From Vitrella brassicaformis CCMP3155 (taxonomy: Eukaryota; Protista; Chromerida): a stretch of DNA of 64,000 bases. Shown piece after piece: positions 42,707-63,150 of the stretch. Each line of letters opens with the position of its first letter. The first letter of the stretch is position 1. Both the position numbers and the translations under genes were made by a program. The notes under the pieces were generated by a model. It saw only the letters and a list, made by a program, of their open reading frames with translations. It did not search any database and had not been told where the DNA came from. The stretch is taken from the NCBI GenBank assembly GCA_001179505.1, contig CDMY01000542.1, positions 124,001 through 188,000 of the forward strand, in the 5' to 3' direction.

Positions 42707-42742
42707 GAGATCGGAAGGTGTGGTCGTGCTGGCCGCCGCCTT

Positions 42743-42821
42743 CCAGTGAGGGGTGCCACCATCTTCTCTCACTGGGTGCGTGTTGGTGGCTGGGGTGCGG
42801 CCGTCCAGTGAGGGGTGCCAC
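42743..42821 (-). pseudogene. Two tandem fragments of the kinase-like family terminal exon (VAPLTG)
   Basis: ccagtgaggggtgccac at about 42743 and 42805; the minus strand matches gtggcgcccctcattgg (about 58135) and gggccccctcactgg (about 60860). Confidence 0.45.
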
Positions 42822-43624
42822 ACCACCATTCGAGGTGGGGCCACTGGGTGTTGCTGGGGCTGCTTCCCGGGGCTCTGAGTGGGTGAGATGAAGTCGCCGG
42901 TCTCTTTGTTGGTGGCGGCAGGTCTCTTTGTTGCTGGTGGGCGTTGGGCATCTGTTGTCGGGACTCGGTAGGTGGCCTGCAGCAGCATAGAATACAACGC
43001 CATATACACTGTATCGTGTGCTAGTGCAGATGACGGACATTGATGTGTGTCAGGGTGGCATCGGCTCAGCCACATGGTGCCTGCGACACAAACAGACAAC
43101 ACCCACCCACACACGTACGTATCCAGCCACAAGAAATGCATGCATTTGTAAGTGCTATCCGGTGGTGTGGGGTGTCGCCCTCACCTGTTGGCTCTCTCTG
43201 TTGGTGCCCTTCTGTCTCTGCGGCCTTCTAGTGGGCCCTTCTCTCTTTTTTGTCTGCCTTCTGCTGGGCTGTGTTGGGTCTTTTACTTGTCCTTTCTTTC
43301 CCCACCACCCACGCACACACACATTGGATTGGGGCCATTCCAGCCCCACAGCACCCACAACGATACAAATAACTCCAGAGAGGTGAAGCAATGCAATCCT
43401 TACGACGGCCAGACACAAGGCAAGACAGATGGGCAGAAAGGCGACCACACGGACGAAATATACCTCACACAGCCACACATGGGTGGTCAGATAGCCGGTG
43501 TGCTTCCCTCTCCTCTCTCCATCCATCCATCCATCCCAACCGGAGTCAGTCAGGGGGGCCACGCTACTCTCACTGACTTGCCTGCCTGCCTGCCTGCCTG
43601 CCTGCCACCCAGCAGTCAAATGGA

Positions 43625-44030
43625 TGGATGGCTCGATGACTGGCCGCCGCTCCTCTCTCGCAGCAGGTTGACCATCTGCGGATGGGTCAGGGGTGCGTGC
43701 TGGTTGGGGCTGAGGCCAGGCCCACCACCTTCCAGTATGTGTCCAGGGCCAGGCTCTGCTGGTGGGTGCGCGGGGGGGTGGAGCCGTCCGGCAGCTTCTC
43801 GACGGTGTGGTGCGGCTTGAGCAGCCGCTTCATGGCCATACCTGCAGGGATACAGATATGTATTGCATCACATTCACCATGCATGTGCATGTGTCCGTTG
43901 GTGCTCTCTCTGTCTCGGCTGCCCGCCCAGCTGCTTCAACTCCTGCACCGGGGGCTTGTAGGGATCGATGTGGCGGTCTGCCCCCTCTATGATCGCCCGC
44001 CGGCGGTCGTCAATCTCGCCTGGCGGGGGA
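43625..44030 (-). pseudogene. Divergent kinase-like family, piece K2 (last two exons; frameshift and GC donor)
   Basis: EIDDRRRAIIEGADRHIDPYKPPVQELKQL / GMAMKRLLKP...TYWKVVG, one-base loss in a G run, then PLTHPQMVNLLRER. Confidence 0.65.
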
Positions 44031-44255
44031 GGCGGTGGTGTGTCTCCTCCCTTGTGCGGCCATTTCCAGCCTGAGATGTCGAACTTCAGGGAGAGCTCGG
44101 GCTGGAGCTGGCCGGCTTGCTGTAACAGGATGGAGGTCAGGCAGGACATATCAGCACTCCTTCTTACTTGACCGCAGAATGCTGTTGAAAGACTTCCTTC
44201 CCACCTCGAGGCAGCTCCTTTGTGTCGATGTGCACTCGTACGGCAGTAGAAAACT

Positions 44256-44290
44256 CCCGACGAATATGAAATGCAGGCGGCGATCTGAGA
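44256..44290 (-). repeat. 30-bp 'DRRLHFIFVG' motif, copy 2
   Basis: Reverse complement tctcagatcgccgcctgcatttcatattcgtcggg. Confidence 0.8.
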
Positions 44291-44392
44291 GGCACGATAC
44301 ATCAATGCGAAGATAGGAGAGGAACATTGCCTGCCCAGTTGCTGACAGCATCATACCTGGGTCCGATGCGTTGCGAACAAGACGGCGTGTGT

Positions 44393-45160
44393 CTACATGG
44401 CTCCAGGCCACCCGCCCTTTCCTCCCTGATCCTTGTCGTCCTTGCCCCCCCCTCCCCCCTTGTGGTCGTCGTGTCCCTTGCGGCCCTTCTGAGGACTCGG
44501 TTTCTTGCTTCGCTGCTGGTTTCGGTGAGGGCTCTTCGGCAAGGCCGGCGGGGGAGGAGGCTGCATGTCGGCAGGAGACAGCAACAGCAGCAAGGACATA
44601 TGCACACGTGTTGATGTTTGCGTGTGTGTGTGTGCGTGTGTGTGGCCATACCGAGTGGGGGATCTGGTGCTTGTCCAGTATTTCGTTGGCGAGGTCCTTT
44701 GGGGTCTTCTTGCGGAGAGACAGCCCCCTCTGGTCGGGCGAGAGGCTGCGTTCCCCGCCAATCCGCTTGACGACCTCGTTGTAGAGCCAGGCGCGTCCCT
44801 CAAGTCGGTGTGCCTCCACGAACCTGCCGAGCTGCTCCCTCAGGCGGTCGAGTGCTTGCTGCTCTTCGTCGATCGTGGCGTTGGCCCATCTGCCTTGGGG
44901 CGGGGACGGGGGGGAAACGAGATCAGCTGAAGGAAATGACAAAAAAAGTGTGTGGGTGTCTGTAAGCGTCTTTCTGTGAGTGAATGTGGACCGGGAGATG
45001 CGATGGTGAAGCGAGCGAATCGGGGACGCGCAGTGGCCGTGGTGGTGGTAGTGGTGGTTGGCGCTCCTGTGGTGGAGGGCAGCCCCTGCGCCTGCGTGGC
45101 CCCCACGTACGCCTCTACATGCACAAGCGACAGCAAAAACAGCCAATGCACCGAAACACA
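44393..45160 (-). CDS. Hypothetical protein with Thr-rich linker and Lys/Gly-rich tail; possible signal peptide
   Basis: WLFLLSLVHVEAYVGA, PTTTTTTTATA, exon EEQQALDRLREQLGRFVEAHRLEGRAWLYNEVVKR; start unresolved. Confidence 0.35.
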
Positions 45161-45285
45161 GAGAGAGAGCGAATGTTTTGTGGGTGACAGACCTGTAGTT
45201 TGAGAAGTTGATGCCCCACCGAGCGCTCCAGCAACCGTGGCGCCAGCCGACACGCCATCACCAACTCAACTAGTGGTACCTGAAT

Positions 45286-46208
45286 ATGATAACAAGAGCA
45301 TGCTCATGTCCCTTTCTCATACCTCTGCTCACCCGCCGGGAACTGTGCCCCTCCTATCGATGCCCCAAGACCTCCAACGGTAGCAGCCCCCATGCCCAAG
45401 GCACCAGTGGACACCGTGGACGTGCCTGCGGAAGGGCTGACGGTGGCGGGCGCCATGGCTGGGAGGGATGGGCCGCCCGAGGGAGGCAGGTGCAGACTCG
45501 CACCAAACAATCCTCCACCTAGATAAGACACGGAACGCACAAATGTGCACCTGATTTGTCACGCATGTGTGTGGTTGGGGGGGTGGGAGGAGCGCCTACC
45601 TGTCTGTGTCTCTTGGACCGACGTCAACGAGATGCCAATAGCGCCGCCCGAGTCGGACGCTGGAGCTGAAATGGCCGTTACAGTGCTGCCAGCACACCTG
45701 CGCACCAAGAACGAAGAGAAGAAAAGGCACACCCAGATCCAGCTTAAGGAAATGACCACACAGCTTGTGAGACAATGCCCCCTTTGCTGAATGCCAAACA
45801 ACAGCATTGAGACATTCAGTAATAGTGGGCTGCGTACCGGATGGCCGGCCGTCGTCCTCGAATTGCAACAAATGTTGCGCCAAATTCCTCGCCTCGTCGA
45901 AACGGCCGCCTTCGGTTTCAGGAAAGTCAGTTCCCTGTCCGAAGAACATATACAGAAGAGATGGTCAGCTGTGGTACATCGCGCATTAGTCACTTACCTT
46001 CTTAGTGCACTCGTATGCTTCGGACGTACTGACGTTGTCAGCGATATCGAATGGAAACCTCTGGTACAACATCATGTATCTGATGGATGCAAACAAGCAA
46101 GACCCATACATCGACGAAAATACATTTGATGGAGACACGTCACTGCTTCAACGCTTACGTATCACCCCAACCGCCCACATGTCGGAGGCCTTTGAGTATC
46201 TCCCTTGA
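45286..46208 (+). pseudogene. Degenerate coding-like remnant with internal stops
   Basis: Protein-like stretches (LLSMPQDLQR*, QLKEMTTQLVRQCPLC*, YASDVLTLSAI...LLQRLRITP) broken by stops; no firm homology. Confidence 0.25.
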
Positions 46209-46337
46209 AGGCACTCAGCGGCCTATTCACACATGAACAGCGACCAGAGAGCCAGCAAGCAGGAGGCAAGGTAGGATTGGGCGTGTCGTATGCGTGGCCG
46301 CTCGTTCACTCACTCACTCGCTTACTCAATCACTCAC

Positions 46338-47948
46338 TCACCATATAGGGTCATGGAGCACATCGATCCTGAGGTCGTAATCCTGCAGCGCCGACACAGC
46401 CTTCTTGACGTAATCGGTGAATGTCTCCTGGTCTTGCTGGAGTTGGAAAAAGAGCTCGCCGGAGGCGGGTGCGCGGGCGATGAGCTCATCCATCGCTTGT
46501 GCCCGGACAGAAGCCCTTTCGTCAACCACCCTCCCATCACCATCAACGGCCTCGGCGAGGTCAAAATCGCGCAGCCTCGGCCCCTCCTCTTGTCGCACAA
46601 AAACAATGTTGTCCGCTTTGAGATGATCTGAAAAGGCACATAAAGCAATCAACCCCACTGCGAGAAGGCTGTTGCGCATCTCCTGGTTCTCCGGTTGACT
46701 TATGTGGTAGAAGCCAACGATCCCAAAGAACAGCGCAAAGCCGAGCATCACCGCTTCCCAACCACCGCCACCCAGCCTTGGCAACGCCCCACGGAACGGC
46801 GTGCACGCAAGTACGTCGCTGTCCTGGATGTGCTCGAGAGCGAGGAACAGCCTGTCGATGATGACTCTGCAGTGGAATTCTGGCAGTTGGCCCTCGAAGC
46901 TGTCCAGGTAGCTGCTGAGAGTGATGCCGCTCAGCTTCTCCAGCACGATGTTGACGTAGTCGGCACCCACAATGTATGGGGGGCTGTCGTGCTGGAGAAG
47001 CTCGTAGACGGCGCGTGCAGTGGGGCAGCTGAGGGCAACGACGTGAAGCCACACAATTCCACAACACATCATCTGCAAACATTGCTTACATTGCTGATTG
47101 TCTCGATGCTCTGCGCGACCCGCACGTAGAGAGGCAGGGTTTGGGGTACGTGTCGACAACGAATCGGCACACCTGCAAAACACAGAGGCACAAAACACAC
47201 AGACACACGCACAGACGCATAGACATACACACGTACGCATCGATGCCGCATCCGCAATTGATGCGTCACCTGCGGTCGTGATGATGTTAATGTTCATGCA
47301 TAGCTCCACAGATGCTGAAAAGGGTCGCCATATTGTTTATGGGCTTCTATCACGGCCAGAACCTTGTTCCGCTCCTCTTCGATGGTGTAGATGGCTCCAA
47401 CCTTGCTAAAGATTACGGCCATCCTACGTGCCATCCTGCGGTCCTTCTTCGACTGAGCCGTCGAGAAAAGATCCCGGATGAAATTGATGAACAGCAAATC
47501 GATGGGAGTAGCCATGCTCGTGTGGAGGGGGGGACGCGCGCGTCTGTCGTGTGTCGCACGGGCCCTCACGTCGCTGGGCGCAGGAGAGGATTTGGCTATC
47601 CTCTTGACGACGCAGTGCCTCCTCGTCTCCCTGTCGATGGCCGTCCACAGCTGTGTGCCGTCCCTGAACCAATCACACATTCACACACACGGACAGATTC
47701 CCTTCTTACCCACTGACGCCCTACGTACCTCTGGCGCGGCGCCAGATCCACGTCGAGGAGAAACGCTCGGTGATGTTCTTCAAGTTCCCCATCGTGCTGT
47801 TTTGTTCAGGAGGGAACCGAAGGGAAAAACGCGTACGCACACGCCGCGAACGAGCGCTGATGGCGCTCGTCCACGCAGGGCACAGAGCGACGAAGATGGG
47901 TCTGTGCGACTAGCTGGCGCTGCTCGAGCTCACCCGTTTGAATGACAT
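46338..47948 (-). CDS. Highly divergent protein-kinase-like gene, possibly pseudokinase or pseudogene
   Basis: LWTAIDRETRRHCVVKRI (II), YVNIVLEKLSG (V), IDRLFLALEHIQ (VIa), HLKADNIVF (VIb), RDFDLA (VII); no Gly-rich loop or APE seen; splicing unresolved. Confidence 0.5.
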
Positions 47949-48175
47949 GCTGCTGGAGAGTGTGGTGGGGCGCGCGGGAGTGGACGAGGAGCGGGCCGCT
48001 GATGACAGGGATGTTGGCGACACACCACAGTGCGCCGTCGGACACCACGGATTGCAATACGATGAATTCGCAGAATCGTCTAATCTTGTTTTTTTTTCCG
48101 TCTCACGCGATTTCTCGACGAGAATTCTAATTCTCGCCAAACTTTGTGGACCTTGCATCGAACCAGCAACGTCCC

Positions 48176-49610
48176 TTATGCCCCTGCTGTCCTCTGCCCA
48201 CTATCTCGCAGATCTGGCCTCTCGCACCCAGCCGCACACGTAACAACAGCTACACCCTCCATGGCTACTCTTTCCCGATCTTCCACCCCATCACAGTCAC
48301 ACTCGTTCTGCCGTGCGTCAGCCGGCGACACATCCACCCCTACATCAATCGACTCAAGGCGGGTCGGCTGCGTGTCTGCCTTGGTCATCTTCTCCGTGCC
48401 TCTGTCCTTGTCAGCCACCATCACCTCCCCGTTTGTCTTTCTTTGTTCTCTGCGGCTCTGCCACAGCACGAGGGCAGAATGTGCAACCATGGTGAACAGC
48501 ACAATGCTCACGCCAATCAGAGCCATCGTTGAAGGCGTCTCACCCTCAGAGAGGAACACATAGAAAGGCCCCAAAACCACCTCCACATTCAAGAAGAGAG
48601 CCGCTTCTGCCGGATGGAGATATCGTGGGCCGATGGTGAGGCAGGCGAAGGCTATTGGGATGGACAAGCACCCCTGGATCACAAACCAACCGATGTCGGA
48701 CCACTTGAAGTAGCCGAGCGGCGTGAAATCGAGCTCTCCTGCTGCGGCAGAAACAATGGTTGTCAGCAGGGCGGCGTAGGCGACAATGAGCATTGGGCTG
48801 AGATGGCTGTGCTTGCGCAGCAGGGCCTTGACAACGACAAAGTAGATACCCACAGTGATGGCCACCACCAAAGCCAGCAGGTTGCCCCACAGACCACTGC
48901 CATTGATGTCATCGATGAACACAAGGGCCACACCGCTTAGAACAGCAACGATGGCCAGCCACAGAGAGAGGGGCGCGTGCTCACGGAGAAATAATGTCGA
49001 GAAGAGACCAGCGAATAGAGGATTTGACGCGATGATCCTGCGATCACACGAAAGACAGTGAGTGGATAGATGTCAGTTGGCAAGCGCTGCTTACCCGAGA
49101 GTGTTGGCGACCGTTGTCATTAGAATGGCGAATGGAAAGGAAAGCTGCGGCAGACAGACAGACACTTCAGAGCGTCAGGAACGTGCATTCAAGCATTCGG
49201 TTCGCTTAACCTGTGTGAGTGAGAGGGGAGCAATCGCGCACAGGACGCCAGGGAAGCCAGCCTTGAGTGTCCGCCATCGCTCACCAGGCGGCGTCGTGAC
49301 AAGCGTGGCGGTCAGCAGAGTGAAGAAGAGGAGGATCTGCCGCCCAAATGCAATGGTCCAGGCATTGTAGTGCTTCACCTGCCTGCAGTACGAGCAAGAA
49401 AAAGAGAACACACGAATGAACCACAAGCCGTGAATGCAATGTATCCTCCTTTCTGTGTGTATGCGTGCCGATCCCCGACCTGATCAGCAATGAATCTGGC
49501 GTGAGCACAAGAACGCCGCCGAGAACGACAAGTGTCCCCTTCAGTCTGTCTGGCAAATGCGCGCATCGAAGAATCCTCCTCAAGCCTTTCGATGATTCTC
49601 TCGTGGTCAT
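48176..49610 (-). CDS. EamA/DMT superfamily transporter
   Basis: KGTLVVLGGVLVLTPDSLLIR, IASNPLFAGLFSTLFLRE, IGPRYLHPAEAALFLNVEVVLGP, EGETPS; about 10 TM segments. Confidence 0.88.
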
Positions 49611-49993
49611 TTGTGGTGGGGCGAGCAGGACCGAGTACCACCGAGTATCACTGCCTCAGCCGCCTCAAATTCGCAAGGCGCTTGCCATTCTAAGCTCGTA
49701 GCTGATCTCGCAAAAAGGGATTTCGAGGTTCGGGCCTTGTTGGTGGTCTGTACAGTAGCAGTGAGAAGAGTGAAGACCTGTCCAGCACCGAAATCGACAG
49801 ATCCGGCGCATTCGCATCGCATGCATCATCACAGAGGTCATTGACGAGGGAGCTGGTGTGCGCATCTATTGAGGCTGTAGCTGGGCAGCAGCAAGCATCG
49901 TGTTGTGTTCCCATTCATCGCTTTGTCATTGGAAGGCAGTGAGTGAGTGAGTGGAATTCGTCGGCTGGCGGCTGTCTTTGAAGGGCAGCAGAT

Positions 49994-52108
49994 ATGGGGA
50001 CCAACTTCTCGCGCCGCATCGGCAGCCAGCCGAAAGTGGGCGTCTTCACGTAAGCCACATGATGAGATGCGCATATGTGCACGCCACACAGACATCGATT
50101 GCTCATGATTCGTGTGGCGTGTGGTGGTGTGTGTTGCACTGACTGGCGTCGTCAGGTGGGTGTCGCACCACCCGAAGAAGCTTGTGGCAGGCATCACGGC
50201 TATAGTTCTCTTCAATTCTGACTACAAGTTCGGCGAGGCCGTGCAGGTCATGGGCAACTCGGCTGGGCTCACAAACGTTCATACGGTGAGGGAAGGTCGG
50301 CACCCACCCACATCCACCACAAACACGTGAACGGGTGGTGCCATGCGTCTGTGTGGCTGTCTGTGTCAGTTATGGTTTCTTCGGATAATCTTCGGCCGGA
50401 CTCGATCGCGGTGGACGGGATTTCTCATGGCCAAACCACTCCCACACTGGACGAGGTGAGCCAACCAACACCGCGACACGAACGCTTTCTCTTCCTGACG
50501 TTAATGCCAGTGTGTGTGTGTGTGTGTGTGTGCAGGAAGCATGTGTTCGGTGCAGGTGCATATCTGCTGGGCATCAACATGGACGAGGTGCGGTATCCGA
50601 TCGACTCCTACCGCAGCATCACCGACTTCTTCTGCAGACAACTCTTGCTCGACGCTCGGCCCATCGAAGACGCACACCCATCCGCAATGGTGCCACAGCC
50701 ACACTCACACTCACACGGTGCCCTCCCAGGTTGACGCGTGTGTCATGGACTCATGTCCATCAGGTGAGCCCGTGTGACTGCAAGGTGATGACGCTCGGTG
50801 ACATCCCTCTGTCGGTGAGCCAGCGGTCGCCGACCGACATCGGTGGGGGCCTCACGGGCGAGGAGGAGGCCCTCCTTTACGACATACGGGACGACAGATA
50901 CAGACTGCCGGCCATGAAAGTCAAAGGTCTGTCGGCTGATGCTGATGCAATGCTGCTTACACAGAGAGAGAGAGGAGAATGAATGACCACATTGCATTGC
51001 ACTGCTTGTGTCGTGTCTATCTGTCCAGGCACCAGCTATCTGATGAGGCATTTTCTCGGCGAAGACCCCAGGAGGAAAGCATCGGTCAGCCACCTAAACA
51101 CGAGAGAGGAATCGCCCACACACACAAACGACTCAACATGCACTGCACCATTCTGCTTCGTGTGTGTGTGCGCAGAAGCCGCTCAAGTACTGTGTGTTGT
51201 ATCTGGGTCCTGCCGACTACCACCACTTCCACTCGCCGTGTGAGTACGACATCCGCATGGCCAAACACTTCCCCGGCGACCTCCTGCCCGTCAACAGCTT
51301 CTTCTTCAGCACATTCAACGTCAGCCAGCCAACCACATAGACAGACGCCATGACATGCAGACACCGCCCGCCCGCCCCTCCATCTGCTCATTGCAGCTGT
51401 GCTGTGCCTCTCTGTGTGGGGATGTGTTTGTGTAGGACATCTTTGCGGTCAACGAGCGTGTTGTAGTGAACGGTAATTGGCACGAGGGCAAGCTGTGGTT
51501 TGCGGCTGTCGGGGCATACAACGTGGGCAGCATAAAACTCTCATTCGACAGGGTCAGTGAGTTGGGGGGCAGCACACCAGGCAAGACACGCAGAGAGGGC
51601 CGAAAACACAGTTGCCGTGTGTGCGCCTGTCTGTGTGTCAGAAATGTTGGACCAACCGGTACCGCACCCCGCCTGTCTATCTGGGAGGGGAGGTCTTCTC
51701 CAACCAATACAAAGGTACACACACCTCACACGCATCCACCGACACAGACACCATCTCGAGACATGTCAGGCCTGATTCATCTGACTGACTGATTGCCTGT
51801 CTGTCTGTCTGTCTGTATGAGTCTCAGATGGGGTGCGGCTGGACCGATCGGAGCATTTGGGGCACTTTCGTCTCGGCTCCAGCATCATCCTCATATTCGA
51901 GGCGCCAGAGGACTGGGAGTGGACTGTGGTGAGCAGACACACACACCGGTGCTGCGTGTCCCGCCCTCACTCTTTTGTGTGTGTGTGTATGTGTGTGTGT
52001 GTTGTGCAGCAAGAGGGTCAGAAGCTGCGTGTGGGTCAGAGGTTAGGTGCTCTCAAGGGCGTTGAGCCCGTTCCCCCCGAGCAGCCGACGCCACTGCTGG
52101 CCACATGA
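49994..52108 (+). CDS. psd: Phosphatidylserine decarboxylase proenzyme
   Basis: DFFCRQL, VSPCDCKV, YLGPADYHHFHSP, NERVV, AVGAYNVGSI, autocleavage motif FRLGSSIILIFE, GQKLRVGQRL. Confidence 0.94.
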
Positions 52109-52503
52109 CGTGACGATGCGTCGAAGGGCTGCAATGCAGCCAGCGTGACGCGGGACAGACAGACAGACACTGTGGTGTGATGTGCAGCGGGTGACTGACG
52201 TGAGGGACAGACAGACGATTTGGCGGCGAAGCGTTTTGTGACATGATTGATGCGATGCCTGTAGACATATAATGGACACTTGGTGTGTATCAGACAGACA
52301 TCACTCGAACTCCTGGTCTCTCTGTGTGCCTCTGTTGCCTCTGCCCAGACACACGAAGTGAGAAGTCGAGTCTGCATGATGTGTGACACACGCCCAATGA
52401 CGGACGCAGCGTGACACACTTCAATCCACGAGTTATGAGCGTTCGTGAGTGACCCCCGAAGGAGCATTTGATGGTATATCTGTGGTTGGTGTGAGGTGTA
52501 TGG

Positions 52504-52603
52504 GTGTGTCGGCTGACCTATTCTGCCGGCCATTGGTTGGCGTAGGCCGTCAGATCAAACATAGCCGATGTGCCAGTGTGGCAGGCGATGTAGGAGGGAG
52601 AGG
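52504..52603 (+). repeat. Left about 100-bp inverted repeat
   Basis: gtgtgtcggctgacctattctgccggccatt...tgccagtgtggcaggcgatgtaggagggagagg; reverse complement of 56129-56227 with about a dozen differences. Confidence 0.88.
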
Positions 52604-53458: not shown

Positions 53459-55500
53459 ATGAAAACCGTTCATGGTGACGACAGATGCGTGCAGAGCGCT
53501 CGTGACGCCCGAGGAATCAGTCTGATTCATAACTTTGCAGGACGATGGATGGCAAAAGCGAATCAGGTGAGAGAAGAGCAGCCTGCCGGCCGGCCAAACC
53601 TCGGGCCAAACAAAGCACGTGAACGATGGGATAGATCATTGTGTGTGCTGTCTGCGTGTGAATGTGTTGTCATTCGGTCTGTCTGGTGCAGATGAGTGAA
53701 ATGGGAACCAGGGATGAGATGCTCAAACAGATTCAGGGCTATCAGACCAATCAGGCGAGGGTACCTAATCGGCACACTCACCTCACTCATTCAGTGCATC
53801 CGTCGCTCATCGGTTGCTTTGTGTTGTTTGTGTGTGCTGTGGTGTGCAGGTCAACAGTGGCATCGGCCGACTCACTCAAATGGACACCTCTGCGATCACA
53901 CCACTGGTGCGGCCAGACTGCCACACACAGCACAAAGGCCTCTGTGTCATGATGCTCTCGTGTGCTCTCATTCACTCATTCATCAGATGGTGGCCAATGT
54001 CACTCGTCAACTCGCCAATGAATCGGCCCGTCTGGCCCAGCTGGCGGACAGCATCGACTCGACCATCGCACTCACAACACACACCCGCACTCAGGTGAGA
54101 GAGAGACCACACAGTGACACACACAGACACACACAGCTGCCTGTATGTCTTTCTGTGTGTCGTCAGGCTCGGCGGTTGCACGTGACTGACATTCCCGCCG
54201 GGCCGATGAGCATCGTCCTGGCATTCTCTGACCTCACGACCGTCGGCCGCTTCAAGTCGACAGCCCGCCACTTCAGAAACGCCCTGCGGCCCATCATCCG
54301 CAATATTCGGCTGCGGAGGGCCATCGAGTGTGCGGGGGTGTGGGCTGTGGTGCGGTTCGACGATCAGCTGAGCCACGGCGATGTGATGAAGGCCATGTGG
54401 GTGATGGAGGAGGAGGGCGAGGCCGGCTGGGTTGAGGCGGCTGACACGCTCAGACTCTCCGAGCATCTCGGCTGTTGCCAGCTGCCGGTTACTGTGGGTG
54501 CTGGAGATATGCAGACACACGCCAGCAAGGCGGTAAGCACGACACACAGAAGAGGCAATGGGAAAGCTGCTGGATGTGTCATTCAGGACTTCTTGGCACT
54601 GCCCCGCTTCTGTGCGCAGTGGATGCTCGTCGGTCGCAATGTCGTCCTCCGTCGCCGCACTGGCCAACAAGACGGCACACTCCAGCTCTTCCGCCATAAC
54701 CATGAGATTCGCATCATCCACAACCAACCCGGCTTCGCCATCACCCTCAACCCGCCCCTCCCCCACCCCAACCGCCCCATCCATCCCTTCTCACAGCACC
54801 CCTTCCAGCAACACGCCAAGCCACACGACCCGCCCGTCTGTCAACGCATTGGGTGGGATGATGTTGTAGGCTTGGTGGCGGTAGGTGCCCACGACTGGCG
54901 CGCTTTCTCATCGGCGAGCTCCATGCTGAAGAGGCTGATGCTGAATTACCGGGTGATGGTTGGGGACGGCATCTCCCATTCGCCAATAGTGGCGGTAGAC
55001 CGGTGAGTGGATGGACGGCAGGTCGCCTGTACCATAGCAAATAGCCTGTGCTATGTGTCAAATGTGTGTGCATCAGGAGTGTGTGTGGTGGTTATTTGGA
55101 TCGCATCGTGACACAATCCCCTCACACGCCCCTTGACGAGTGCTCACACGTGACGGCATACGAGGCGGTCGATGGGGCCTGTGTGTAGTCGCATCGGCTG
55201 ACATCATCGTACGACCCGTTCATGGCATGGGTTGCCTTTCGCACCCCTCCAGGCACCAACCAGAACGGTACGCATGCGTGTGAGGGAACGAGAACCCCAC
55301 AACACGTGTTGTGTTGTGCCATCCTGTGGCCTCCTCTATGGCTGCGTGCAAAAGGCATCTTCATTCGTACCACCGAATCGCCAGCAGCAGGTGTGGCCCA
55401 TGACGCCCCATTCGCCCACCGATTCCCCCTGACGGCAGCCAAGGCGAGGCCCGTCCTCGGCCCCATCGCAACCATCGTCCTCGACGGCCAGGCACTCTAG
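53459..55500 (+). pseudogene. Lineage-specific multi-exon gene (F-box-like helix then unknown domain) with one in-frame TAG at 55186-55188
   Basis: HVTDIPAGPMSIVLAFSDLTTVGRFKSTARHF, CCQLPVTVGAGDMQTHASK, HDPPVCQRI, RFPLTAAKARPVLG; all introns GT-AG. Confidence 0.6.
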
Positions 55501-56128
55501 ACCATGATGTAGGCATTGTGCGGGTGTTATTGTGGGTTCTACAAGCTGACTTGCTGAACGACTAGCGTCACGGGGGACACACAAGTAGCTGACTGTCTGT
55601 CTGGTGGTAAGGTGGGTGGGCGGACTGGGTGCTGCATGATGGACAGACAGATGCGTGCGTGCGCAAGGTCTGGATGTGACGAATGCGTGTGTTGAGAAGA
55701 TTATGCGCACATCATGTCAATCGGTCCTTTGCTTTAGTCTTTTTTCTGTCCGACAAGCTATACCGTCACGTCACACAGAGAAGAGGCGCACAGATGTGCC
55801 TATTCACGTACGGATGTCCTCATGCACGGCGACAGCACACCACACGGACTGGGGCAGAAAATCGGTGCCCACGCATGGAAGATAAAGATGAAATAGAGAT
55901 GGGTGTTTCTTCTGTCAGCGGCAGCAACCGACAGACGCTCCGCAGAGCTTTGCAGATCGGATGGCTCAGCAAAGTTCTGCAGAAGAAGTGCCGCACTTTT
56001 GCAAATCGGATGGCAGCAGGGGCGATTGTGTCCGCTGACTTGCTGCCGTCCAGACGGATGTCATGAGAATCCTTCCATCAATCCGGCCACGCACCCCACA
56101 AGAGAAACAATCGCAGGTTGATGGTAGA

Positions 56129-56227
56129 CCTCTCCCTCCTACATCGCTGCCACACTGGCACATCGGCTGTGTGCAATCTGACGGCCTATGCCTAGTAATG
56201 GCCGGCAGAATAGGTCAGCTGACACAC
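56129..56227 (-). repeat. Right about 100-bp inverted repeat
   Basis: Reverse complement of 52504-52603. Confidence 0.88.
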
Positions 56228-56259
56228 TAACCACCAGGGCTGCCCTTTCCTTTCCGGCG

Positions 56260-56315
56260 AGAATTGGAGACGTTACTGGCCGGCGAGAATTTTGGACAGT
56301 AACGTCTCCAATTCT
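56260..56315. repeat. Perfect hairpin: 19-bp stem, 18-nt loop
   Basis: agaattggagacgttactg (56260-56278) / cagtaacgtctccaattct (56297-56315). Confidence 0.9.
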
Positions 56316-56604
56316 GACACAAGAAATTTCATTTCGGCGTTTGGCATCAGTTCGTCCGTGTTCTGTTCTCTGCTCTCCCGTAATCACTTCGTCGCACCAG
56401 CTCCACGCCATCGAGGCACCTCTCCGACCGACTGACGACGGTGGGTGCCCCGATGAGACCGTCCTACTCCGCCCCCCTCATGGGATGTGTGTCCACCGGC
56501 TGGGCCCAGCCACAGCAGCGAGATGGCACGGCCGCCAAGCGACCGAGGACGGAGCGGAGTCGTGGACTTCGCTTTCCCCTCGGCCCGCACGGAGACGCTT
56601 ATAC

Positions 56605-58274
56605 ATGGGCTTCCTCACTGAGGCGACAGGCACCACCGTTGACGAAGCGGTAAGTGCAGATCGATGCACTCACTCATTTGGAAGACCTGTGTGGCCCTCA
56701 GACCTGTGTGGACGCCATCAAGCCCGAACAATACGTCCACGTAGGATGGATGAATGGATGAGTCACATGACACCAGCAGATGGACAATTGGATGTGTTTC
56801 CCGTGTTGTTGTGTGTGGTCAGCTGCACAGGCTGCGGGAGTTCCTCGATGGCGACGTCGTGGTACGCACACAGACACCACACACACACACAGAGGGAGAG
56901 ATCAGATGCACAGACTTTTTGTGGTGTGATGTTGGTTCAGGGGGAGCTGTTGCGGTGCGACCTTCGGGTGCGTTGCGCGGGCCACCCCAGGATCGTCGGC
57001 CATGGCGGCAACGGCATCGTCGTCCACTCGGACTACATCGACGCCGCCGAGGTGCCTGAGGACGCCCCGCAGCTCTGCATGAAGCTCATCACGCACGACG
57101 ATGAGGGCAACTGGGTACACGCGCCAGACCGCACCACAGCACAGCACCTCGCGTCACGCCTCCATGGGTGTCTGTTCTGGACGTGTGTGGGTGTAGGTGT
57201 ATGAGGGGTTCATGTTGGTTGAGGAGGCCGCCATGGCCTGGAAGCAGCAGCAGGTCGACGGATGGGACAGCGCCACAACCGCCAGCAGCACGAGCCCACC
57301 CAGCCGCCCGGCCACCTACACATTCCCCTCCAGCCCCGACATGAACACCAAGCTGGCGGACGTGTTTGCAAAGTGGACCGGGTGGCCCAATTTCGTGCTT
57401 CCTTAACATGCAGCGGACCATGATGGTCATGCCGCTCATGGAAGGTATGCCAGTGAGCCACCAGAGAGTCACCGTCAGTCCAGGGCACTTGATGGTCTCT
57501 GGTTTGGTGTGTGCACCAGGGACGTGGGATAGCGAGGGCGTCCGTGAGGGGCTCACACTGCCGCAGGCGTGTGGGCTCTTTCACACTGCGTTGGAGGGGC
57601 TGGGAAAGTTTCATGAGCGGGGCATCTCCATTAATGACATCAAGTCGAATGTAAGCCGACACACGACATAACCGTACCACTTTTTCTCCCTCTCCGTGTG
57701 CGTATGGGTGCAGGGGGACAACACGGGCTCCTTTCGCGGGAGTGGGGTGTGGTTTGATTTCGACCAGGCTGTAAGGCACACACACAGCAGCACTTCTCAT
57801 AGTGGCGTTGATGTGTTGCGTGGATTGATGGCTGCAGCTGAGGGCAGGGGCCATAGACGACCGCCGTCGGCTGATCATGGAGGGCTCCGAGCAGGGCACT
57901 GACCCTTATCGGAGCCCAGAGGCTGAACTCAAGCAGCTGGGTGAGCTACACGCACAAACACACATTTACTGTAATCCATCCAATTTGGTGTCGTATGGAC
58001 TCTTTCGTCTGTATCTTTGTCAGGCTGGGCCATCTGCGACCTCTTGCGGCCCCTCACCGAGACCCATGAGGACGGCCAACAGGTCCGTACCGCCCAGAAG
58101 GCGGGGCGGGCTAAGATCACCTACTTCAAGGTGGTGGCGCCCCTCATTGGGCAGCAGCTCCAACTCAAGGACAAGAACGGCAACCCGGTGCCCCAGCTCA
58201 CGCACCAGCAGATGGTCAAGTACCTCAAGAAGAGCCGGGTTGCCGTCTCGTCCACCACACCCCCTGCCCAGTGA
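56605..58274 (+). CDS. Divergent kinase-like family, most complete member K1 (about 10 exons)
   Basis: IVGHGGNGIV (I), QLCMKLI (II), VMPLMEG (V), FHERGISINDIKSNGDN (VI), VWFDFDQA (VII), GTDPYRSPE (VIII); open only if 57362-57413 is spliced out. Confidence 0.65.
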
Positions 58275-58408
58275 AGTGGCAAAGGCACCCACCACTCGAG
58301 ACGGACAAGGCGGTCGAGCCGCATGGCAGCGAGGGGGGAGGAAATGTGTGATTAATACGTGATGTCTCAGCCGTTTGTTGACGTCATCCTGTTGGTTTTT
58401 CTGTGTTT

Positions 58409-58440
58409 TCAGATCGCCGCCTACATTTTATATTCGTTGA
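58409..58440 (+). repeat. 30-bp 'DRRLHFIFVG' motif, copy 3
   Basis: tcagatcgccgcctacattttatattcgttga. Confidence 0.8.
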
Positions 58441-58868
58441 GCAGGTCTTCATCAGATTCCCGCCCATGAAGCCGCTCATAGACGGTGAGCCCAGAAAACG
58501 CTCAGAGAGACATCAGCCCAGACATATCTGTCTGTCTCTTTGTGTGGCTGTCTGCGTGTACAAGAAACGCGGATGAAGTGTCACAGCTGCACGGTCTGGA
58601 ACTATACTGGCGCCTCACGACGGACACAAGACTCAACCTCGCCCTTGGTACGCGAGCAACTCAAAAGTAAAGAGAATAGACAAGCCAAATGGAACAGACA
58701 AGCCTCTGTCGCCAGGAAGCTTCACCCTCACACGTCGACACGTTGGCGAGAAGGCTTCGGCTGAGGGGGAAGGGCCCGTAACACACAGAGACATGAAGTG
58801 AGCATTAAGGAAGTGTCATGTCGGACGTGTCTGCTTATGTCACTCCTCTCGTGTCTCATCTCAGGTGA

Positions 58869-58903
58869 TCTCATATCGCCGCCTACATTTTATATTCGTC
58901 GGG
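58869..58903 (+). repeat. 30-bp 'DRRLHFIFVG' motif, copy 4
   Basis: tctcatatcgccgcctacattttatattcgtcggg. Confidence 0.8.
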
Positions 58904-59564
58904 CACTTTCATCATCGGACGTCCCCTGCCTGTCGCCGCCCGCGATGAAGCCGCCGATATCCGGGCGAAACTCTTCCAGACTTCAGTGCGTAAGCGAGTG
59001 TGAGCCGCCATCGCGATGGACACATGTGCAAATGGATTCCCTCATATCTCGCGTCCTGCACCGCAGATGAAGATGAGCATGCAACGACAAGTCGGCGATC
59101 ATCCCGAGCCACAAGGAGAAGACTCTGAAGTACGGGAAGGACATTGAGGCCACAGTAAAGCCCCTGAAGCGGCGCCTTACGGTGAGCCCAACGTCAACAA
59201 TAGGTCTACTGACAACTGTTTTGTTTTCCTGTGCAAGAGCTGCCTTTCTCGACGAATGTCGCAGCCTGTTTCTGCATGGTGTCGAAGGTAATTGGTAGGA
59301 ATCGTCAGTCTCCTGTTGATGTCTCCCCACACATCTCTGAACTGGTGAAGACAGCAGCAAGCGGCACGGTAACTTCACCAGACCCTGCCCCCGCTCCTGT
59401 TTAGGTCGATTGCAAGCTACTTGAAAGCTCTCAAGTAATAAAAAGGCTGGTACGAATCAGGCAAACAAGGAAGAAGAGAGAAAAAGAAAAAGAGAGAGTG
59501 AGAGAGAGTATACACGCCCACACAATGATCCGTCTGTGTGTATGGTGTGTATGGGTATGTGCAG

Positions 59565-59750
59565 CCTGACAACGCGGGCAGCTACCGAGGGCATGGCGTG
59601 TGGTTCGACTTCGACACAGCAGTGAGACAGACGCACACCCGCACACAGCACTCGTCATGGTGTTGTCGACATGTTGCGTAGGTGAGGGCAGGCCTCATTG
59701 ACGACCGCCGCAAGCGCATCAAGGCGGGGGCGGACCGCCACCGCCCTTAA
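59565..59750 (+). pseudogene. Kinase-like family piece K3 (subdomain VIb-VII exon plus truncated next exon)
   Basis: PDNAGSYRGHGVWFDFDTA / VRAGLIDDRRKRIKAGADRHRP*. Confidence 0.7.
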
Positions 59751-59763
59751 TACAGGCCCCCAT

Positions 59764-60938
59764 ATGGCGAGAAGGCAGCGTTGTGGCATTGACATCGCTG
59801 TCGCTGCCGCGCTGAGAGAAATTAGCCAGCGTTTGCTGTGGAGAGATAGTCAAGGAGATAGTGTTTTGCCATCGCCATGCCCATCACACTGCCAGACGGC
59901 CGCCAGGGCTACACCCGTTCCGACTACGTGGGGTTGGTTCTACGACAGGTTGCAGGTGCATCGCTGCGCCCCACTGCATGAGGTCAAAAAGGCATATCGC
60001 AAAGGCGCCCTGGTACGCACTGCAAACCGATACGAACGATTGGACGCATCTTGGCGGACGGATGTGTGTGTGTCTGCAGAAAACCCACACAGACAAGGGG
60101 GGTCGCAAGGAGGACTTCCAGGCCTTGGTTGAGGCCTACACGGCCATCAAGAAGGACCTCGAGCGACTCAGGCATGGCGACCCGTCTGACCCGGTACACC
60201 AAGAGCACAGCACCATCACGCTGCATTCATCAATCCTCGCATGTACGTGTGTGCGTTCGGCCGGTCAGATTATCAAGCGGCGCCGCGAGAGGAGGGAGAG
60301 GTACCAGCAGGTAACCGCGGCACACACACACCCACACACGCATTCACCCGCATGCTTCTCTCTCTCTCTCTCTCCCCCCTTCACCCACTCACTCAGCAAA
60401 AGCCGGCCGCCGTGGAGAGGGAGAAGGATCTCAAGCAAATCGAACAAGAGCTGCAGCGGGGGGACAACACGGGCCCGGCAAGTTCATGGGACGCAGCCGT
60501 GAGTGAGCCCACAAACGCCACAGACATCTCCAGCCACACATTTGCGTGTGGATGTTGAATGGACGCATGGATGGATGTGCGTGTAGGTCAAAGCCGCCGC
60601 CACATCATGGAGGGCTCCGCGCAGCAGACAGACCCATTCAGGAGCCAGGAGGACGAAATGATGGTGCTTGGTGGGTGGAATGAATGGTGGTGACACGCAC
60701 ACGCAGCACACGCGCACCATCAATGTGTGGTCTTCGCTCAGGGTATGCAATGATGCCAATCATCAGACGGCTCTTCCAGAAGGACAGGACCGACCCCACC
60801 GGCCGACCATACCGCAGCCCAGCAGCACTAGCGGCACTGGACATCTACTCGAGGGTCGTGGGCCCCCTCACTGGCACCGACACAGGCGCGCAGCCCTTGA
60901 CGCATCGGCAGATGCTGGCTGTGCTCCTCGGGCAGTGA
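59764..60938 (+). CDS. J-domain protein (HPD changed to HTD) spliced in frame to the last two exons of the kinase-like family (K4)
   Basis: FYDRLQV...EVKKAYRKGAL/KTHTDKGG.KEDFQALVEAY; then VKSRRHIMEGSAQQTDPFRSQE / YSRVVGPLTG...PLTHRQMLAVL*. Confidence 0.7.
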
Positions 60939-61203
60939 GGGGGAGGGGCACCCACACCCAGCGCATCACGACGACCACGTCCGGTGCTGGCCCATCATAT
61001 CATCAGGCGGCAAGGGCAGCCCAAGGAAAGGGGCGGGGGAACGTGTGAGAGTGATGGGAGAGACGGAGGGCGTGCGTGTTTGGGCACTCTCGCTGGAACC
61101 GACACAGAGGCGCAAGTGCGAGCTGAAGGAGGCATGTAAGTATCTGGTGTCTCGCCCGTCCTCTGTTGGTGCCATTCTATCGGTGTCTCTCTCCTCCTCC
61201 TCC

Positions 61204-61500
61204 GATCGCCGCCTACATTTTATATTCGTCGGGTTTATCATATCAGCGTGACGTTCTCTCCCACAGCACTGCTCGACACCGACCGCAAGACGACACGCCC
61301 GAGACACCAATGCTTCGTACTCGCAAGCGGAAGAGAGTGTGCAAGATGTTGGCATTCCTGCACACCGCAGCAGTTGCTGCCCTGCCGGGCATGCGAAAGG
61401 TGCGAGACGAGCGTCAGAGATTGTGGCCATTGATAACGCTTTCGGTTGTGCGGCGAGAGCGTCCCGACCCGTTCTGGTTTTGTGAGCGGCGTCAAGAGCC
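61204..61500 (+). pseudogene. 30-bp motif copy 5 (61204-61233) followed by frameshifted coding remnant
   Basis: SSSSDRRLHFIFVG..*, then RVCKMLAFLHTAAVAA and AIDNAFG in different frames. Confidence 0.5.
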
Positions 61501-61691
61501 GACCTCTGTCGCTGGGAGATTTCAGAGTTGGCAAGATTCTTGGCGCAGAGCACTTGAAAGCCGCCACACAACCCGCGGTCCGGTCCCTCCCCCCCTCCGC
61601 AGAATTCATCAGTGTGAAGGTCTTGCCCGCCCAGTTCAAGGCTGCTGCACTGCAAGACGGGCGTGTGGGTGTATTCCATTGATAGCTGCAG

Positions 61692-62150
61692 GTGAGGGCT
61701 GGCCCGATGAATGACCGCCGGAAGCGCATCATGGAGGGGGCGGACCGCGGCATCGACCCGTACAAGCCCCCGCAGGTGGAGATGAAGCTGCTCGGTGAGT
61801 CACACGCACACATGGCCCCTCCCACCACACACACAGACACACACACCAATTGCATCCCCTGTGGTATTGTGGGGGTGCCCTTGTCGGTCTGTATGTCTGT
61901 CAGGCACCGTCATCCGCGGCCTCTTGCGGCCCCTGCTCGACACACACGCGGGAGACCAGCAGGTCCGCACCGCCGATGAGGCCGCCTGGCCAAGGCGACA
62001 TACATCCAGTTGGTGGCGCCTCTCATTGGGCAGCAGATCGTCGTCAAGGACAAGAACGGCAACCCGGTGCCCCCGCTCAGCCATCGGCATGGTCAAGTAC
62101 CTCAGGAAGAGCCGGGTGGCTGAGGCGTCCATGCCATCGGAGGACACCAC
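61692..62150 (+). pseudogene. Kinase-like family piece K5 (last two exons, two frameshifts)
   Basis: MNDRRKRIMEGADRGIDPYKPPQVEMKLL / GLLRPL..QQVRTA, then LVAPLIGQQIVVKDKNGNPVP, then MVKYLRKSR; DNA closely matches 58022-58250. Confidence 0.8.
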
Positions 62151-62165
62151 TAAGAAGGCAGTAAG

Positions 62166-63150
62166 ATGGCAGAGCACGCCCTCAGAAAGTGATTCATCGA
62201 CGTTCCTTGCGTGCGCTATCTTCAGCAGCAGCAGCAGCAGCACAAGTTGACGCTGGAAGAGGTGGTCACTCCCGAAATCATGGTGTGTTGATGTCAACTT
62301 GTCAAGCCCAACTTAACGAGGACCACTCTTTGTTTGTTTGTTTGTTTGTGTGAGCTGTCAAAGCTCGGCCTGCGGGTCTAGACGGACAGCTCGGGCCAGC
62401 CCATGACGGTTGGGGAGGGCATGTACGTCGTGTACCTCGAGTACACCGATGTGCCACCTGGCCAACACCCAGAAGACCGCCCCCGTTTTGTGGCCAAATT
62501 CCTCAAGCGGCCCTCGTTCCCAGATTTTGTAAGTGAAGAACCTCATAGCTTGCCTGTGTTCTGATACATATGAGCGTCTGTCCTTCACCTTCAGGCCCAT
62601 GAAGGCTTTAAGACGGTGCGACGCGCGGCCAACAAGTGGAAGGGCGAGCGCGCTACAAGCGCCAAGGAGACGGCACCCATCCGCCACCCGCCCATCCCGC
62701 CAGCCTCCTGGATGGCCCCTGGGCTGAAGGAGCCGGCTGAGGAATGGAGCGGGTGGCCTCCAGCCGTCCTCCCCTTTCACAACACACACATCAACGTCCA
62801 GACGGACAGCCGGGGTGTCGAGGGGCGTACCGTTGTGATAATGCCATTGATGGAGGGTGAGACAGCAGACGACACATGCAGCACTGCTTCTATACTTTCA
62901 CCTTTCTTTGGTCAGGTACCTGGGACGGACTACAGCTGGGTGAAATCAGCGTTGCTGAGCTCAAGGGCCATTTCGCTACGGCGTTGAGAGGGCTACATTT
63001 CTATCAAGAGAGGGATGTATCCATTTTTGACGTCAAGGTAAGGAGACAAAGGCCACCAGATGAGCTTCGTTTGACCTTGTCTTAAGTGGCTCTCCGTCCC
63101 CCTTTGTGGCTGCCCAGGTTGACAATATGGGAATCTTCAAGGGCCAGTGA
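62166..63150 (+). pseudogene. Kinase-like family member K6 (N-lobe to catalytic loop; premature stops; 3' exons deleted)
   Basis: TAG at 62379-62381; TVGEGMYVVYLEY..RFVAKFL / AHEGFKTV...WSGWPPAVLP...VIMPLMEG / GTWD...LHFYQERDVSIFDVK / VDNMGIFKGQ*. Confidence 0.75.

What the first reader, a model, noticed from the sequence alone, without database searches (positions are those of the whole stretch)
42743..63150. Birth-and-death cluster of an undescribed-looking kinase-like family (DFD, GxDPY)
At least six related pieces (K1-K6) plus fragments share exon boundaries and signatures: GxGxxG-like loop, MPLMEG/GTWD, IxDxKxDN catalytic loop without His-Arg, GxGVWFDFD in place of DFG, DDRRxxIMEG...DPYxxP, and a short non-canonical C-lobe ending VAPLxG...LTHxQM. 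The catalytic Lys, Asp, Asn and Mg-binding Asp appear retained, so intact members may be active. The reduced C-lobe does not match any eukaryotic kinase group I recognise. The pattern of expansion and decay recalls lineage-specific kinase families of apicomplexans (ROPK, FIKK), though no signal peptide is visible.
Basis: partly seen in the sequence, partly recalled or inferred. Interest (0 to 1): 0.7.

Follow-up and report, generated by a model that had tools for sequence, protein, structure and literature searches.

The report
Decaying kinase-like gene cluster in Vitrella
This stretch of the alga Vitrella brassicaformis holds one full-length gene and about six broken copies of a species-restricted gene family that is probably a very divergent protein kinase, so it shows gene duplication and decay rather than a new kind of enzyme.

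Summary
Window 42.7-63.15 kb (Vitrella brassicaformis CCMP3155, contig CDMY01000542.1, about 124-188 kb) carries six clear pieces and one relic of one gene family. They share motifs and GT/AG intron positions. Seven more pieces lie 30-57 kb further along the same contig.

A full HMMER scan of 1.84 billion representative proteins found only seven real relatives. All are short Vitrella-type gene models. Six sit on this contig and one on a metagenome contig.

The kinase reading is plausible but weakly supported:
- The best PDB matches are NIK kinase domains (E 0.28-1), in register from hinge to APE.
- hhalign against a GSK3/CDK alignment gives P 0.026, colinear over G-loop, beta3 Lys, hinge, catalytic loop, DFD/DFG and SPE/APE.
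- UniRef names the one full model (CEM21709.1) "Protein kinase domain-containing protein".
- AlphaFold models were unusable (pLDDT 34-40).

No copy is canonically intact. The 335-aa model stays open only by calling a stop-containing stretch, homologous to coding sequence in the other subtype, an intron. The other copies have stops, frameshifts or truncations.

Pooled dN/dS of about 0.4 indicates past selection. The C-lobe is of normal length, not reduced. The kinase at 45.6-47.7 kb is unrelated.

The parts
56485..58274 (+). K5, the only full-length copy. It is gene model CEM21709.1 (P0129, 335 aa). Exons: 56485-56649, 56823-56863, 56941-57115 (G-loop GHGGNG, beta3 LCMKL), 57198-57254, 57413-57446 (MPLMEG), 57519-57650 (ALEGLGKFHERGISINDIKSN), 57714-57770 (GDNTG..GVWFDFDQA), 57838-57943 (DDRRRLIMEG..GTDPYRSPE), 58023-58274 (VAPLIG..LTHQQM, stop).
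57255..57412 (+). Lesion in K5. This 158-nt stretch is annotated as an intron; the others inspected are 63-82 nt. It continues the reading frame of the preceding exon for 50 codons and is homologous to the coding alphaC-beta4 exon of the K6 subtype (..KLADVFAKWTGWPNFVLP). It ends in TAA at 57404-57406, then shifts frame and lacks about 17 codons (FHNTHINVQTDSRGVEG).
   Evidence: (exB6 vs 57200-57409, E 6e-8)
62352..63147 (+). K6, the 5' two-thirds of the second subtype. Part of it is model CEM21711.1 (P0002). It carries G-loop GEGMYV, FVAKF, MPLMEG, GTWD, the canonical-spacing catalytic loop IFDVKVDN, and VDNMGIFKGQ. There is an in-frame TGA at 62379-62381 (RV*TD). It is truncated at 63147 before the DFD motif, and sequence resembling K5's 3' flank follows (63144-63226 matches 58268-58350).
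59568..59795 (+). Fragment with exon D (DNAGSYRGHGVWFDFDTA) and exon E. Exon E has an in-frame stop at 59748-59750 and IMEG has become IKAG.
60583..60926 (+). Fragment of a third subtype with exons E and F (VGQSRRHIMEGSAQQTDPFRSQE.., VVGPLTG..LTHRQM). The upstream exons are missing. Copies with exons C and D lie at L001 16718-17137 and L003 5711-6127.
61692..62130 (+). Fragment with exon E (MNDRRKRIMEGADRGIDPYKPP) and exon F, which has a frameshift. It is included in the short model CEM21710.1 (P0007).
43625..44020 (-). Fragment with exon E (IDDRRRAIIEGADRHIDPYKPP) and a frameshifted exon F (..APLTHPQMVNLL). The acceptor is lost, the donor is GC, and no upstream exons are present.
42742..42821 (-). 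Weak relic: two short VAPLTG-type remnants of exon F in different frames. It matches by motif only.
59877..60351 (+). J-domain (DnaJ-like) gene piece duplicated together with the kinase-like pieces. Three copies lie in L001. The copy carries HTD where I expect the canonical HPD (the canonical motif is from memory).
   Evidence: E 2.6e-7 to DnaJ models

Best explanation
The region is one half of a single-locus gene family restricted to Vitrella brassicaformis. Its ancestor was most likely a very divergent Ser/Thr-type eukaryotic protein kinase domain. That domain had a Gly-rich loop, a beta3 Lys, a non-RD catalytic loop D-x-K-x-x-N, DFD in place of DFG, and a GTxxYxxPE-like P+1/APE segment.

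Segmental duplication copied the gene repeatedly, together with a neighbouring J-domain gene. Non-allelic recombination and deletions then shuffled and truncated the copies. At least three subtypes now exist, 35-45% identical in protein, and almost all copies are pseudogene fragments.

Shown: the copies, their lesions, shared intron positions, restriction to one contig, and dN/dS below 1. Inferred: the kinase fold, and the view that the one complete ORF (K5, CEM21709.1) is catalytically impaired or itself a bridged pseudogene. The reasons are its disrupted alphaC-beta4 segment, which the annotation splices out, and its displaced catalytic-loop Asn.
For: Family and lesions:
- tblastn maps of the window and of loci L001-L004.
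- Splice-site contexts.
- Stops and frameshifts.
- L001 copies are rearranged, deleted versions of window 56.2-60.35 kb at 83-96% nucleotide identity.

Restriction:
- phmmer over 1.84e9 representatives gave 8 hits. Seven are short Vitrella-type models and one is a spurious bacterial repeat protein.
- All NCBI members are CEM21709-CEM21735 on the 350-kb contig.
- Viral contigs and JGI metagenome contigs gave nothing.

Past selection:
- Pooled over paralogous exon pairs there are about 46 nonsynonymous and 33 synonymous changes. Neutrality predicts about 3.3:1. Omega is 0.12-0.63 per pair.

Kinase reading:
- The family profile and P0129 have NIK/MAP3K14 as their top kinase matches in PDB (E 0.28-1). 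The P0129 match covers 102 residues in register from hinge to APE.
- hhalign against 42 GSK3/CDK sequences scores 23.8 (P 0.026). Column shuffles give 7.9 +/- 2.9 with a maximum of 14.9, and the reversed alignment gives 17.7.
- The extended hhalign alignment is colinear over all motif blocks. The K6 subtype on its own aligns colinearly as well.
- UniRef names CEM21709.1 'Protein kinase domain-containing protein'.
Against: - No kinase match is statistically significant on its own. A CMGC HMM scores the family at -2.2 bits.
- K6 alone finds nothing in PDB.
- AlphaFold2 gave pLDDT 34.5 and 39.7, and Foldseek on that model is meaningless.
- K5 is annotated as a complete ORF, so it could be functional.
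- Exon versus intron conservation is mixed. K5 against L001(-) shows exons 89.8% and introns 93.2% identical.
- I could not search the rest of the Vitrella genome at the DNA level, so an unannotated intact copy is not excluded.
Confidence: 0.7

Rival explanations
1. It is an orphan, Vitrella-specific protein family that is not a kinase. On this view the kinase-like motifs are a chance resemblance, and the weak NIK and hhalign hits come from short similar strings such as ALEGL..H....D.K.
For: - All kinase matches have E above 0.2 or P above 0.02.
- The CMGC HMM finds nothing.
- K6 alone finds nothing in PDB.
- There is no confident model.
- phmmer over 1.84e9 proteins hit not one kinase.
Against: - Six or seven motif blocks fall in the canonical order and with canonical spacing in two subtypes that are only about 35-45% identical.
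- The domain length matches a kinase: G-loop to hinge is about 69 aa and DFD to the end is 112 aa.
- Six of the seven weak PDB hits to the A1 profile, six of eight to A5, and the top six hits to P0129 are one kinase, all aligned in register.
- UniRef's automatic name calls a kinase domain.
Confidence: 0.17
2. This is the first reader's view: an expanding family of active atypical kinases, with intact members functioning like the lineage-specific ROPK or FIKK families.
For: - Lys, catalytic Asp and the Mg-binding Asp are retained in both K5 and K6; the catalytic-loop Asn keeps canonical D-x-K-x-x-N spacing only in the K6 subtype.
- dN/dS is below 1.
- K5 has a complete annotated ORF.
- The metagenome contig L002 carries well-formed K6-type 3' exons.
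Against: - Every copy examined has a lesion.
- K5's ORF depends on splicing out a stop-containing former exon.
- L002 has a frameshift and a GA donor.
- The family is confined to one locus, and only seven short models exist among 1.84e9 representative proteins.
- No signal peptide is evident in MCVHRLGPATAARWHG.. (by eye).
Confidence: 0.1
3. The pieces are cargo or remnants of a mobile element or an integrated virus, which would explain the dispersal and both orientations.
For: Copies lie in both orientations, with mosaic, shuffled blocks and recurrent junctions. One example is the join of 56625 to 57430, shared by two L001 copies.
Against: - No transposase, reverse transcriptase or integrase Pfam hit appears on any called gene in L001, L003 or L004.
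- Viral contigs gave no relatives.
- GC content matches the surroundings.
- All copies lie within about 80 kb of one contig rather than being dispersed.
Confidence: 0.03

Closest known systems
Eukaryotic protein kinase (ePK) domain, Ser/Thr type. The nearest solved example by sequence is NIK/MAP3K14.
   Same: - The order and spacing of the G-loop, beta3 Lys, hinge, D-x-K-x-x-N loop, Mg-binding Asp and xPE segment match.
- NIK's MELLEG / ALEGLEYLH / HGDVKADN aligns with MPLMEG / ALEGLGKFH / INDIKSN(GDN) and IFDVKVDN.
   Different: - There is no His-Arg before the catalytic Asp.
- DFG is DFD.
- The alphaF Asp and the alphaH-alphaI Arg are not recognisable.
- The APE-to-alphaF linker is about 5 residues short.
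- Similarity is below significance (E 0.28 or higher), so no group assignment is possible.
Lineage-specific expanded kinase families of apicomplexans (FIKK, ROPK)
   Same: It is a divergent kinase-like family restricted to a lineage and amplified locally. Its neighbours include J-domain genes, much as FIKK expansions in Plasmodium sit beside DnaJ-type expansions. That comparison is from my own knowledge and was not tested.
   Different: - There is no FIKK motif, and a G-loop is present where, from memory, FIKKs lack one.
- No signal peptide or export motif is seen.
- The family occupies one locus and has one complete ORF.
- Most copies are dead.
- The host is a free-living, coral-associated alga.
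Pseudokinases and unitary pseudogene clusters formed by segmental duplication
   Same: Motifs are degraded, the catalytic loop of the K5 type carries an insertion, and the copies show truncations, stops and frameshifts.
   Different: The key Lys and Asp residues are still present, and dN/dS of about 0.4 shows that constraint acted until recently.

Membership tests
ePK superfamily | Gly-rich loop GxGxxG between beta1 and beta2 | tested here: met
   K5 has GHGGNG at 56997-57014. K6 has GEGMYV, with the third Gly replaced. hhalign aligns both to GSGSFG.
ePK superfamily | beta3 Lys (VAIK) | tested here: met
   K5 has LCMKL and K6 has FVAKF. Both align to VAIKK in the extended hhalign alignment, at low confidence.
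ePK superfamily | alphaC Glu | tested here: inconclusive
   Candidate Glu residues exist (VEEAAMAW in K5, PAEEWSGW in K6), but this region did not align. In K5 the K6-like alphaC-beta4 segment is disrupted.
ePK superfamily | Catalytic loop HRDxKxxN | tested here: inconclusive
   Asp and Lys are present in all copies. His-Arg is absent (IND in K5, IFD in K6). The Asn spacing is canonical in K6 (DVKVDN), but K5-type copies have two extra residues (DIKSNGDN).
ePK superfamily | DFG motif | tested here: not met
   All copies that include this exon read DFD or DYD. The Mg-binding Asp is kept and the Gly is replaced by Asp.
ePK superfamily | APE / P+1 segment 20-35 residues after DFG | tested here: met
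   K5 has GTDPYRSPE, with its Glu 31 residues after the first Asp of DFD. The K6 type has GTGRFAYVE on L002.
ePK superfamily | Statistically significant match to a kinase-domain profile | tested here: inconclusive
   - PDB gives NIK at E 0.28-1.
- hhalign gives P 0.026-0.047.
- The CMGC HMM scores -2.2 bits.
- UniRef's name implies an external profile hit, which I did not verify.
- Pfam and PROSITE were not available here.
ePK superfamily | Bilobal kinase fold | tested here: inconclusive
   AlphaFold2 gave pLDDT 34.5 for the single sequence and 39.7 with the family alignment. Foldseek found no match at E 0.001 or better.
FIKK kinases | F-I-K-K motif with no Gly-rich loop (as I recall the family; not checked here), plus an export signal | tested here: not met
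   No FIKK string appears in any copy and a G-loop is present. No hydrophobic N-terminus is seen in P0129 (by eye).
APH / choline-kinase-like ELKs (these also carry an acidic residue after 'DF') | Brenner motif HxDxxxxN, with no Lys at position +2 of the catalytic Asp | tested here: not met
   The loop is D-x-K-x-x-N, which is the Ser/Thr ePK type. An APE-like segment is also present.

The most novel reading that the evidence does not exclude
An orphan kinase lineage unique to Vitrella. It would have a non-RD catalytic loop and a DFD Mg-site. At least one product (K5, or an unassembled K6-type gene like the one on metagenome contig L002) would be expressed and bind ATP, possibly acting together with the co-amplified J-domain proteins. 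That would be a free-living counterpart of the kinase-plus-DnaJ expansions of apicomplexan parasites.
Probability: 0.1. Interest if true: 0.6.

Novelty: new member of a known kind. Interest (0 to 1): 0.3.

Why it matters
If the kinase reading holds, this is a small, species-restricted and very divergent branch of the protein kinase superfamily, caught while it decays. It illustrates how lineage-specific kinase families arise and die in the closest photosynthetic relatives of apicomplexans. It also bears on annotation quality: seven short 'unnamed protein product' models here are pseudogene fragments, and the one full model bridges a lesion with an intron. It does not currently open a long-standing question or show a new mechanism.

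Tried and rejected
- Sequence searches of the spliced K5 found nothing. These were phmmer against PDB, NCBIfam, and the word-indexed 5.8e9-protein search, which returned only P0001.
- P0008, a 3500-aa bacterial repeat adhesin, matched through repeated 'DADGNWVYNV..' units. I rejected it as spurious.
- AlphaFold2 was run twice, on the single sequence and with the family alignment. Both models had low confidence. Foldseek on the poor model returned only noise.
- A search with the 46-47.7 kb kinase gene in the large protein database found nothing. The PDB search showed it is an ordinary ePK, and hhalign showed it is not a family member.
- A CMGC HMM against the family gave no match.
- The K6 composite against PDB gave no match.
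With a single protein it found nothing in viral or JGI metagenome contigs.
- Two literature searches found no paper describing this family.
- I considered a mobile-element origin and rejected it. No element-type protein domains are called on the neighbouring genes, and all copies lie in one 80-kb region.
Full report
**Source of the window**

The window is eukaryotic: GC is about 58%, introns are short, and CA-rich microsatellites are frequent. Gene model P0002 is encoded at window 62.4-63.15 kb. It lies at 186,403 on contig CDMY01000542.1 (350,186 bp) of Vitrella brassicaformis CCMP3155, assembly GCA_001179505.1. The window therefore corresponds to about 124,001-188,000 of that contig.

Exon-sized tblastn queries map six solid copies or fragments and one weak relic:

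| Position | Strand | Content | Lesion |
|---|---|---|---|
| 42742-42821 | - | exon F remnants (VAPLTG) | motif-level relic only |
| 43625-44020 | - | exons E, F | frameshift in F |
| 56413-58274 | + | K5, all exons | disrupted alphaC-beta4 stretch |
| 59568-59795 | + | exons D, E | stop at 59748 |
| 60583-60926 | + | exons E, F of a third subtype | upstream exons missing |
| 61692-62130 | + | exons E, F | frameshift in F |
| 62352-63147 | + | K6, exons A-D | stop at 62379, truncated at 63147 |

Intron positions and phases are shared among copies, including degenerate ones.

The family continues on the same contig at about 216-244 kb (loci L003 and L001), with seven more fragments in both orientations. 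The L001 copies are 83-96% identical in DNA to window 56-64 kb. They are mosaic, with recurrent deletion junctions such as 56625 joined to 57430.

J-domain gene pieces alternate with the kinase-like pieces in both sub-clusters. Between the sub-clusters lie ordinary genes: arginase, an Arm/HEAT RING protein and the trifunctional GART enzyme.

**Not everything in the span belongs to the family**

- The gene at 45.6-47.7 kb (-) is a separate, ordinary though divergent ePK. It hits CaMK1 and PKA structures at about 1e-5, with 500 PDB sequences matched at E below 1. It shows no profile similarity to the family (P 0.49).
- The span 48-55 kb holds a transporter-like gene, a gene resembling phosphatidylserine decarboxylase, and an unknown gene.

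**Distribution**

An exhaustive phmmer scan of 1.84 billion representative proteins returned eight hits:
- Seven are short models of 70-443 aa. Six are Vitrella 'unnamed protein product' entries, CEM21710-CEM21735, all on this contig.
- The seventh (P0004) comes from a 2.2-kb metagenome contig, ERZ893784 (L002). It is 91% identical in DNA to K6.
- The eighth is a bacterial repeat adhesin and is spurious.

Viral contigs and JGI metagenome contigs gave nothing. The family is therefore, as far as can be seen, confined to one locus of one species or a close relative.

**State of the copies**

K5 is annotated as a complete 335-aa ORF (CEM21709.1 = P0129). The model treats 57255-57412 as a 158-nt intron, whereas the other introns inspected are 63-82 nt. 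That stretch continues the upstream reading frame for 50 codons. It is homologous to the coding alphaC-beta4 exon of K6 (E 6e-8) and ends in TAA at 57404. A frame shift and a loss of about 17 codons follow. K5 is therefore either a gene with a truncated N-lobe or a pseudogene that the annotation bridges.

K6 has an in-frame TGA in exon A and is cut off before the DFD motif. It is joined to sequence like K5's 3' flank.

L002 carries well-formed K6-type exons E and F that the assembly lacks. It also has a frameshift in exon B, a GA in place of the GT donor after exon C, and a GC donor after exon E.

No canonically intact copy was seen.

**Was it ever a real gene?**

Yes. Pooled over paralogous exon pairs there are about 46 nonsynonymous and 33 synonymous differences, where neutrality predicts about 3.3:1. 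Omega per pair is 0.12-0.63. Exon versus intron identity is mixed. K6 against L002 shows exons at 93% and introns at 85%, while K5 against L001(-) shows exons at 90% and introns at 93%. This fits constraint in the past and neutral decay in some copies.

**Is it a kinase?**

Evidence in favour:
- The motif series falls in canonical order and spacing in two subtypes only about 35-45% identical. The series is GHGGNG/GEGMYV, LCMKL/FVAKF, MPLMEG, ALEGLGKFH/ALRGLHFYQ, INDIKSN(GDN)/IFDVKVDN, DFD, and GTDPYRSPE/GTGRFAYVE.
- The family profile and P0129 have NIK/MAP3K14 kinase domains as their top kinase matches in PDB, at E 0.28-1. For P0129 the match covers 102 residues in register from hinge to APE.
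- hhalign against an alignment of 42 GSK3/CDK proteins gives score 23.8 and P 0.026. Column shuffles give 7.9 +/- 2.9 with a maximum of 14.9 in 150 trials, and the reversed alignment gives 17.7. The extended alignment is colinear over all blocks.
- UniRef names CEM21709.1 'Protein kinase domain-containing protein'. I infer that this reflects a PROSITE or InterPro profile hit, but I could not check it.

Evidence against:
- Nothing reaches significance on its own.
- A CMGC HMM gives no match.
- K6 alone finds nothing in PDB.
- Both AlphaFold2 models are unusable, at pLDDT 34.5 and 39.7. Foldseek on the model is therefore noise.

I put the kinase fold at roughly 75%.

- The C-lobe is not short. 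DFD to the C-terminus is 112 aa, and SPE to the C-terminus about 86 aa. From memory, the corresponding PKA spans are about 113 and 89 aa. Only the APE-to-alphaF linker is about 5 residues short.
- The catalytic Asn has canonical spacing only in the K6 subtype. K5-type copies carry a two-residue insertion (DIKSNGDN).
- 'Intact members may be active' has no support in the available sequence.

**Verdict**

This is a Vitrella-restricted, single-locus, very divergent family of protein-kinase-like genes. It was amplified together with J-domain genes by segmental duplication and is now mostly pseudogene debris. One complete but structurally compromised ORF remains. It is a new member of a known kind, of modest interest.

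Noticed in passing
window 6462-8433 (+) and 40525-42523 (-): A 2-kb inverted duplication at 89.4% identity. It carries a GSK3/CMGC-type protein kinase gene (YILKQLLGSGTFGKCY.., RDIKPENILF, SRPYRAPE). The best database relatives are GSK3-beta-like proteins, at about 1e-33.
   Followed up: partly
window 45600-47700 (-): A separate divergent ePK gene with catalytic loop SDHLKADN and DFD in place of DFG (RLRDFDLAEAV), so it may be a pseudokinase. It hits CaMK1/PKA structures at about 1e-5 but found nothing in the word-indexed 5.8e9-protein search. It is not related to the K family.
   Followed up: partly
window 59877-60351; L001 144-617, 14880-15242, 17743-18210; L003 6763-8138: J-domain (DnaJ-like) gene copies are co-duplicated and alternate with the kinase-like fragments. 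The window copy reads HTD where I expect the canonical HPD (the canonical motif is from memory).
   Followed up: partly
window 52504-52603 and 56129-56227 (inverted); L001 9529-9627: A 100-bp repeat at 90-94% identity lies upstream of K5, with one copy inside the neighbouring locus. It could be a small dispersed repeat.
   Followed up: no
L002 (ENA ERZ893784 contig k147_2480521, 2165 bp): A metagenome contig 91% identical to window K6 carries K6-type exons E and F (IEKGSPRIEKLAGTGRFAYVEKNVEWWKLG; GKTFFNTYRG...ILEQGSP) that are missing from the reference assembly. This suggests a related strain or an unassembled paralogue.
   Followed up: partly
window 48176-48931 (-) and 50327-52100 (+): These are a drug/metabolite-transporter-like membrane protein ORF and exons of a gene resembling phosphatidylserine decarboxylase. 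The NCBIfam hits are weak (E 3e-4 to 6e-4). They are ordinary genes sitting between the family pieces.
   Followed up: partly
window 53549-55188 (+): An annotated 381-aa gene overlaps a 436-aa ORF. It has no family hit and its function is unknown.
   Followed up: no
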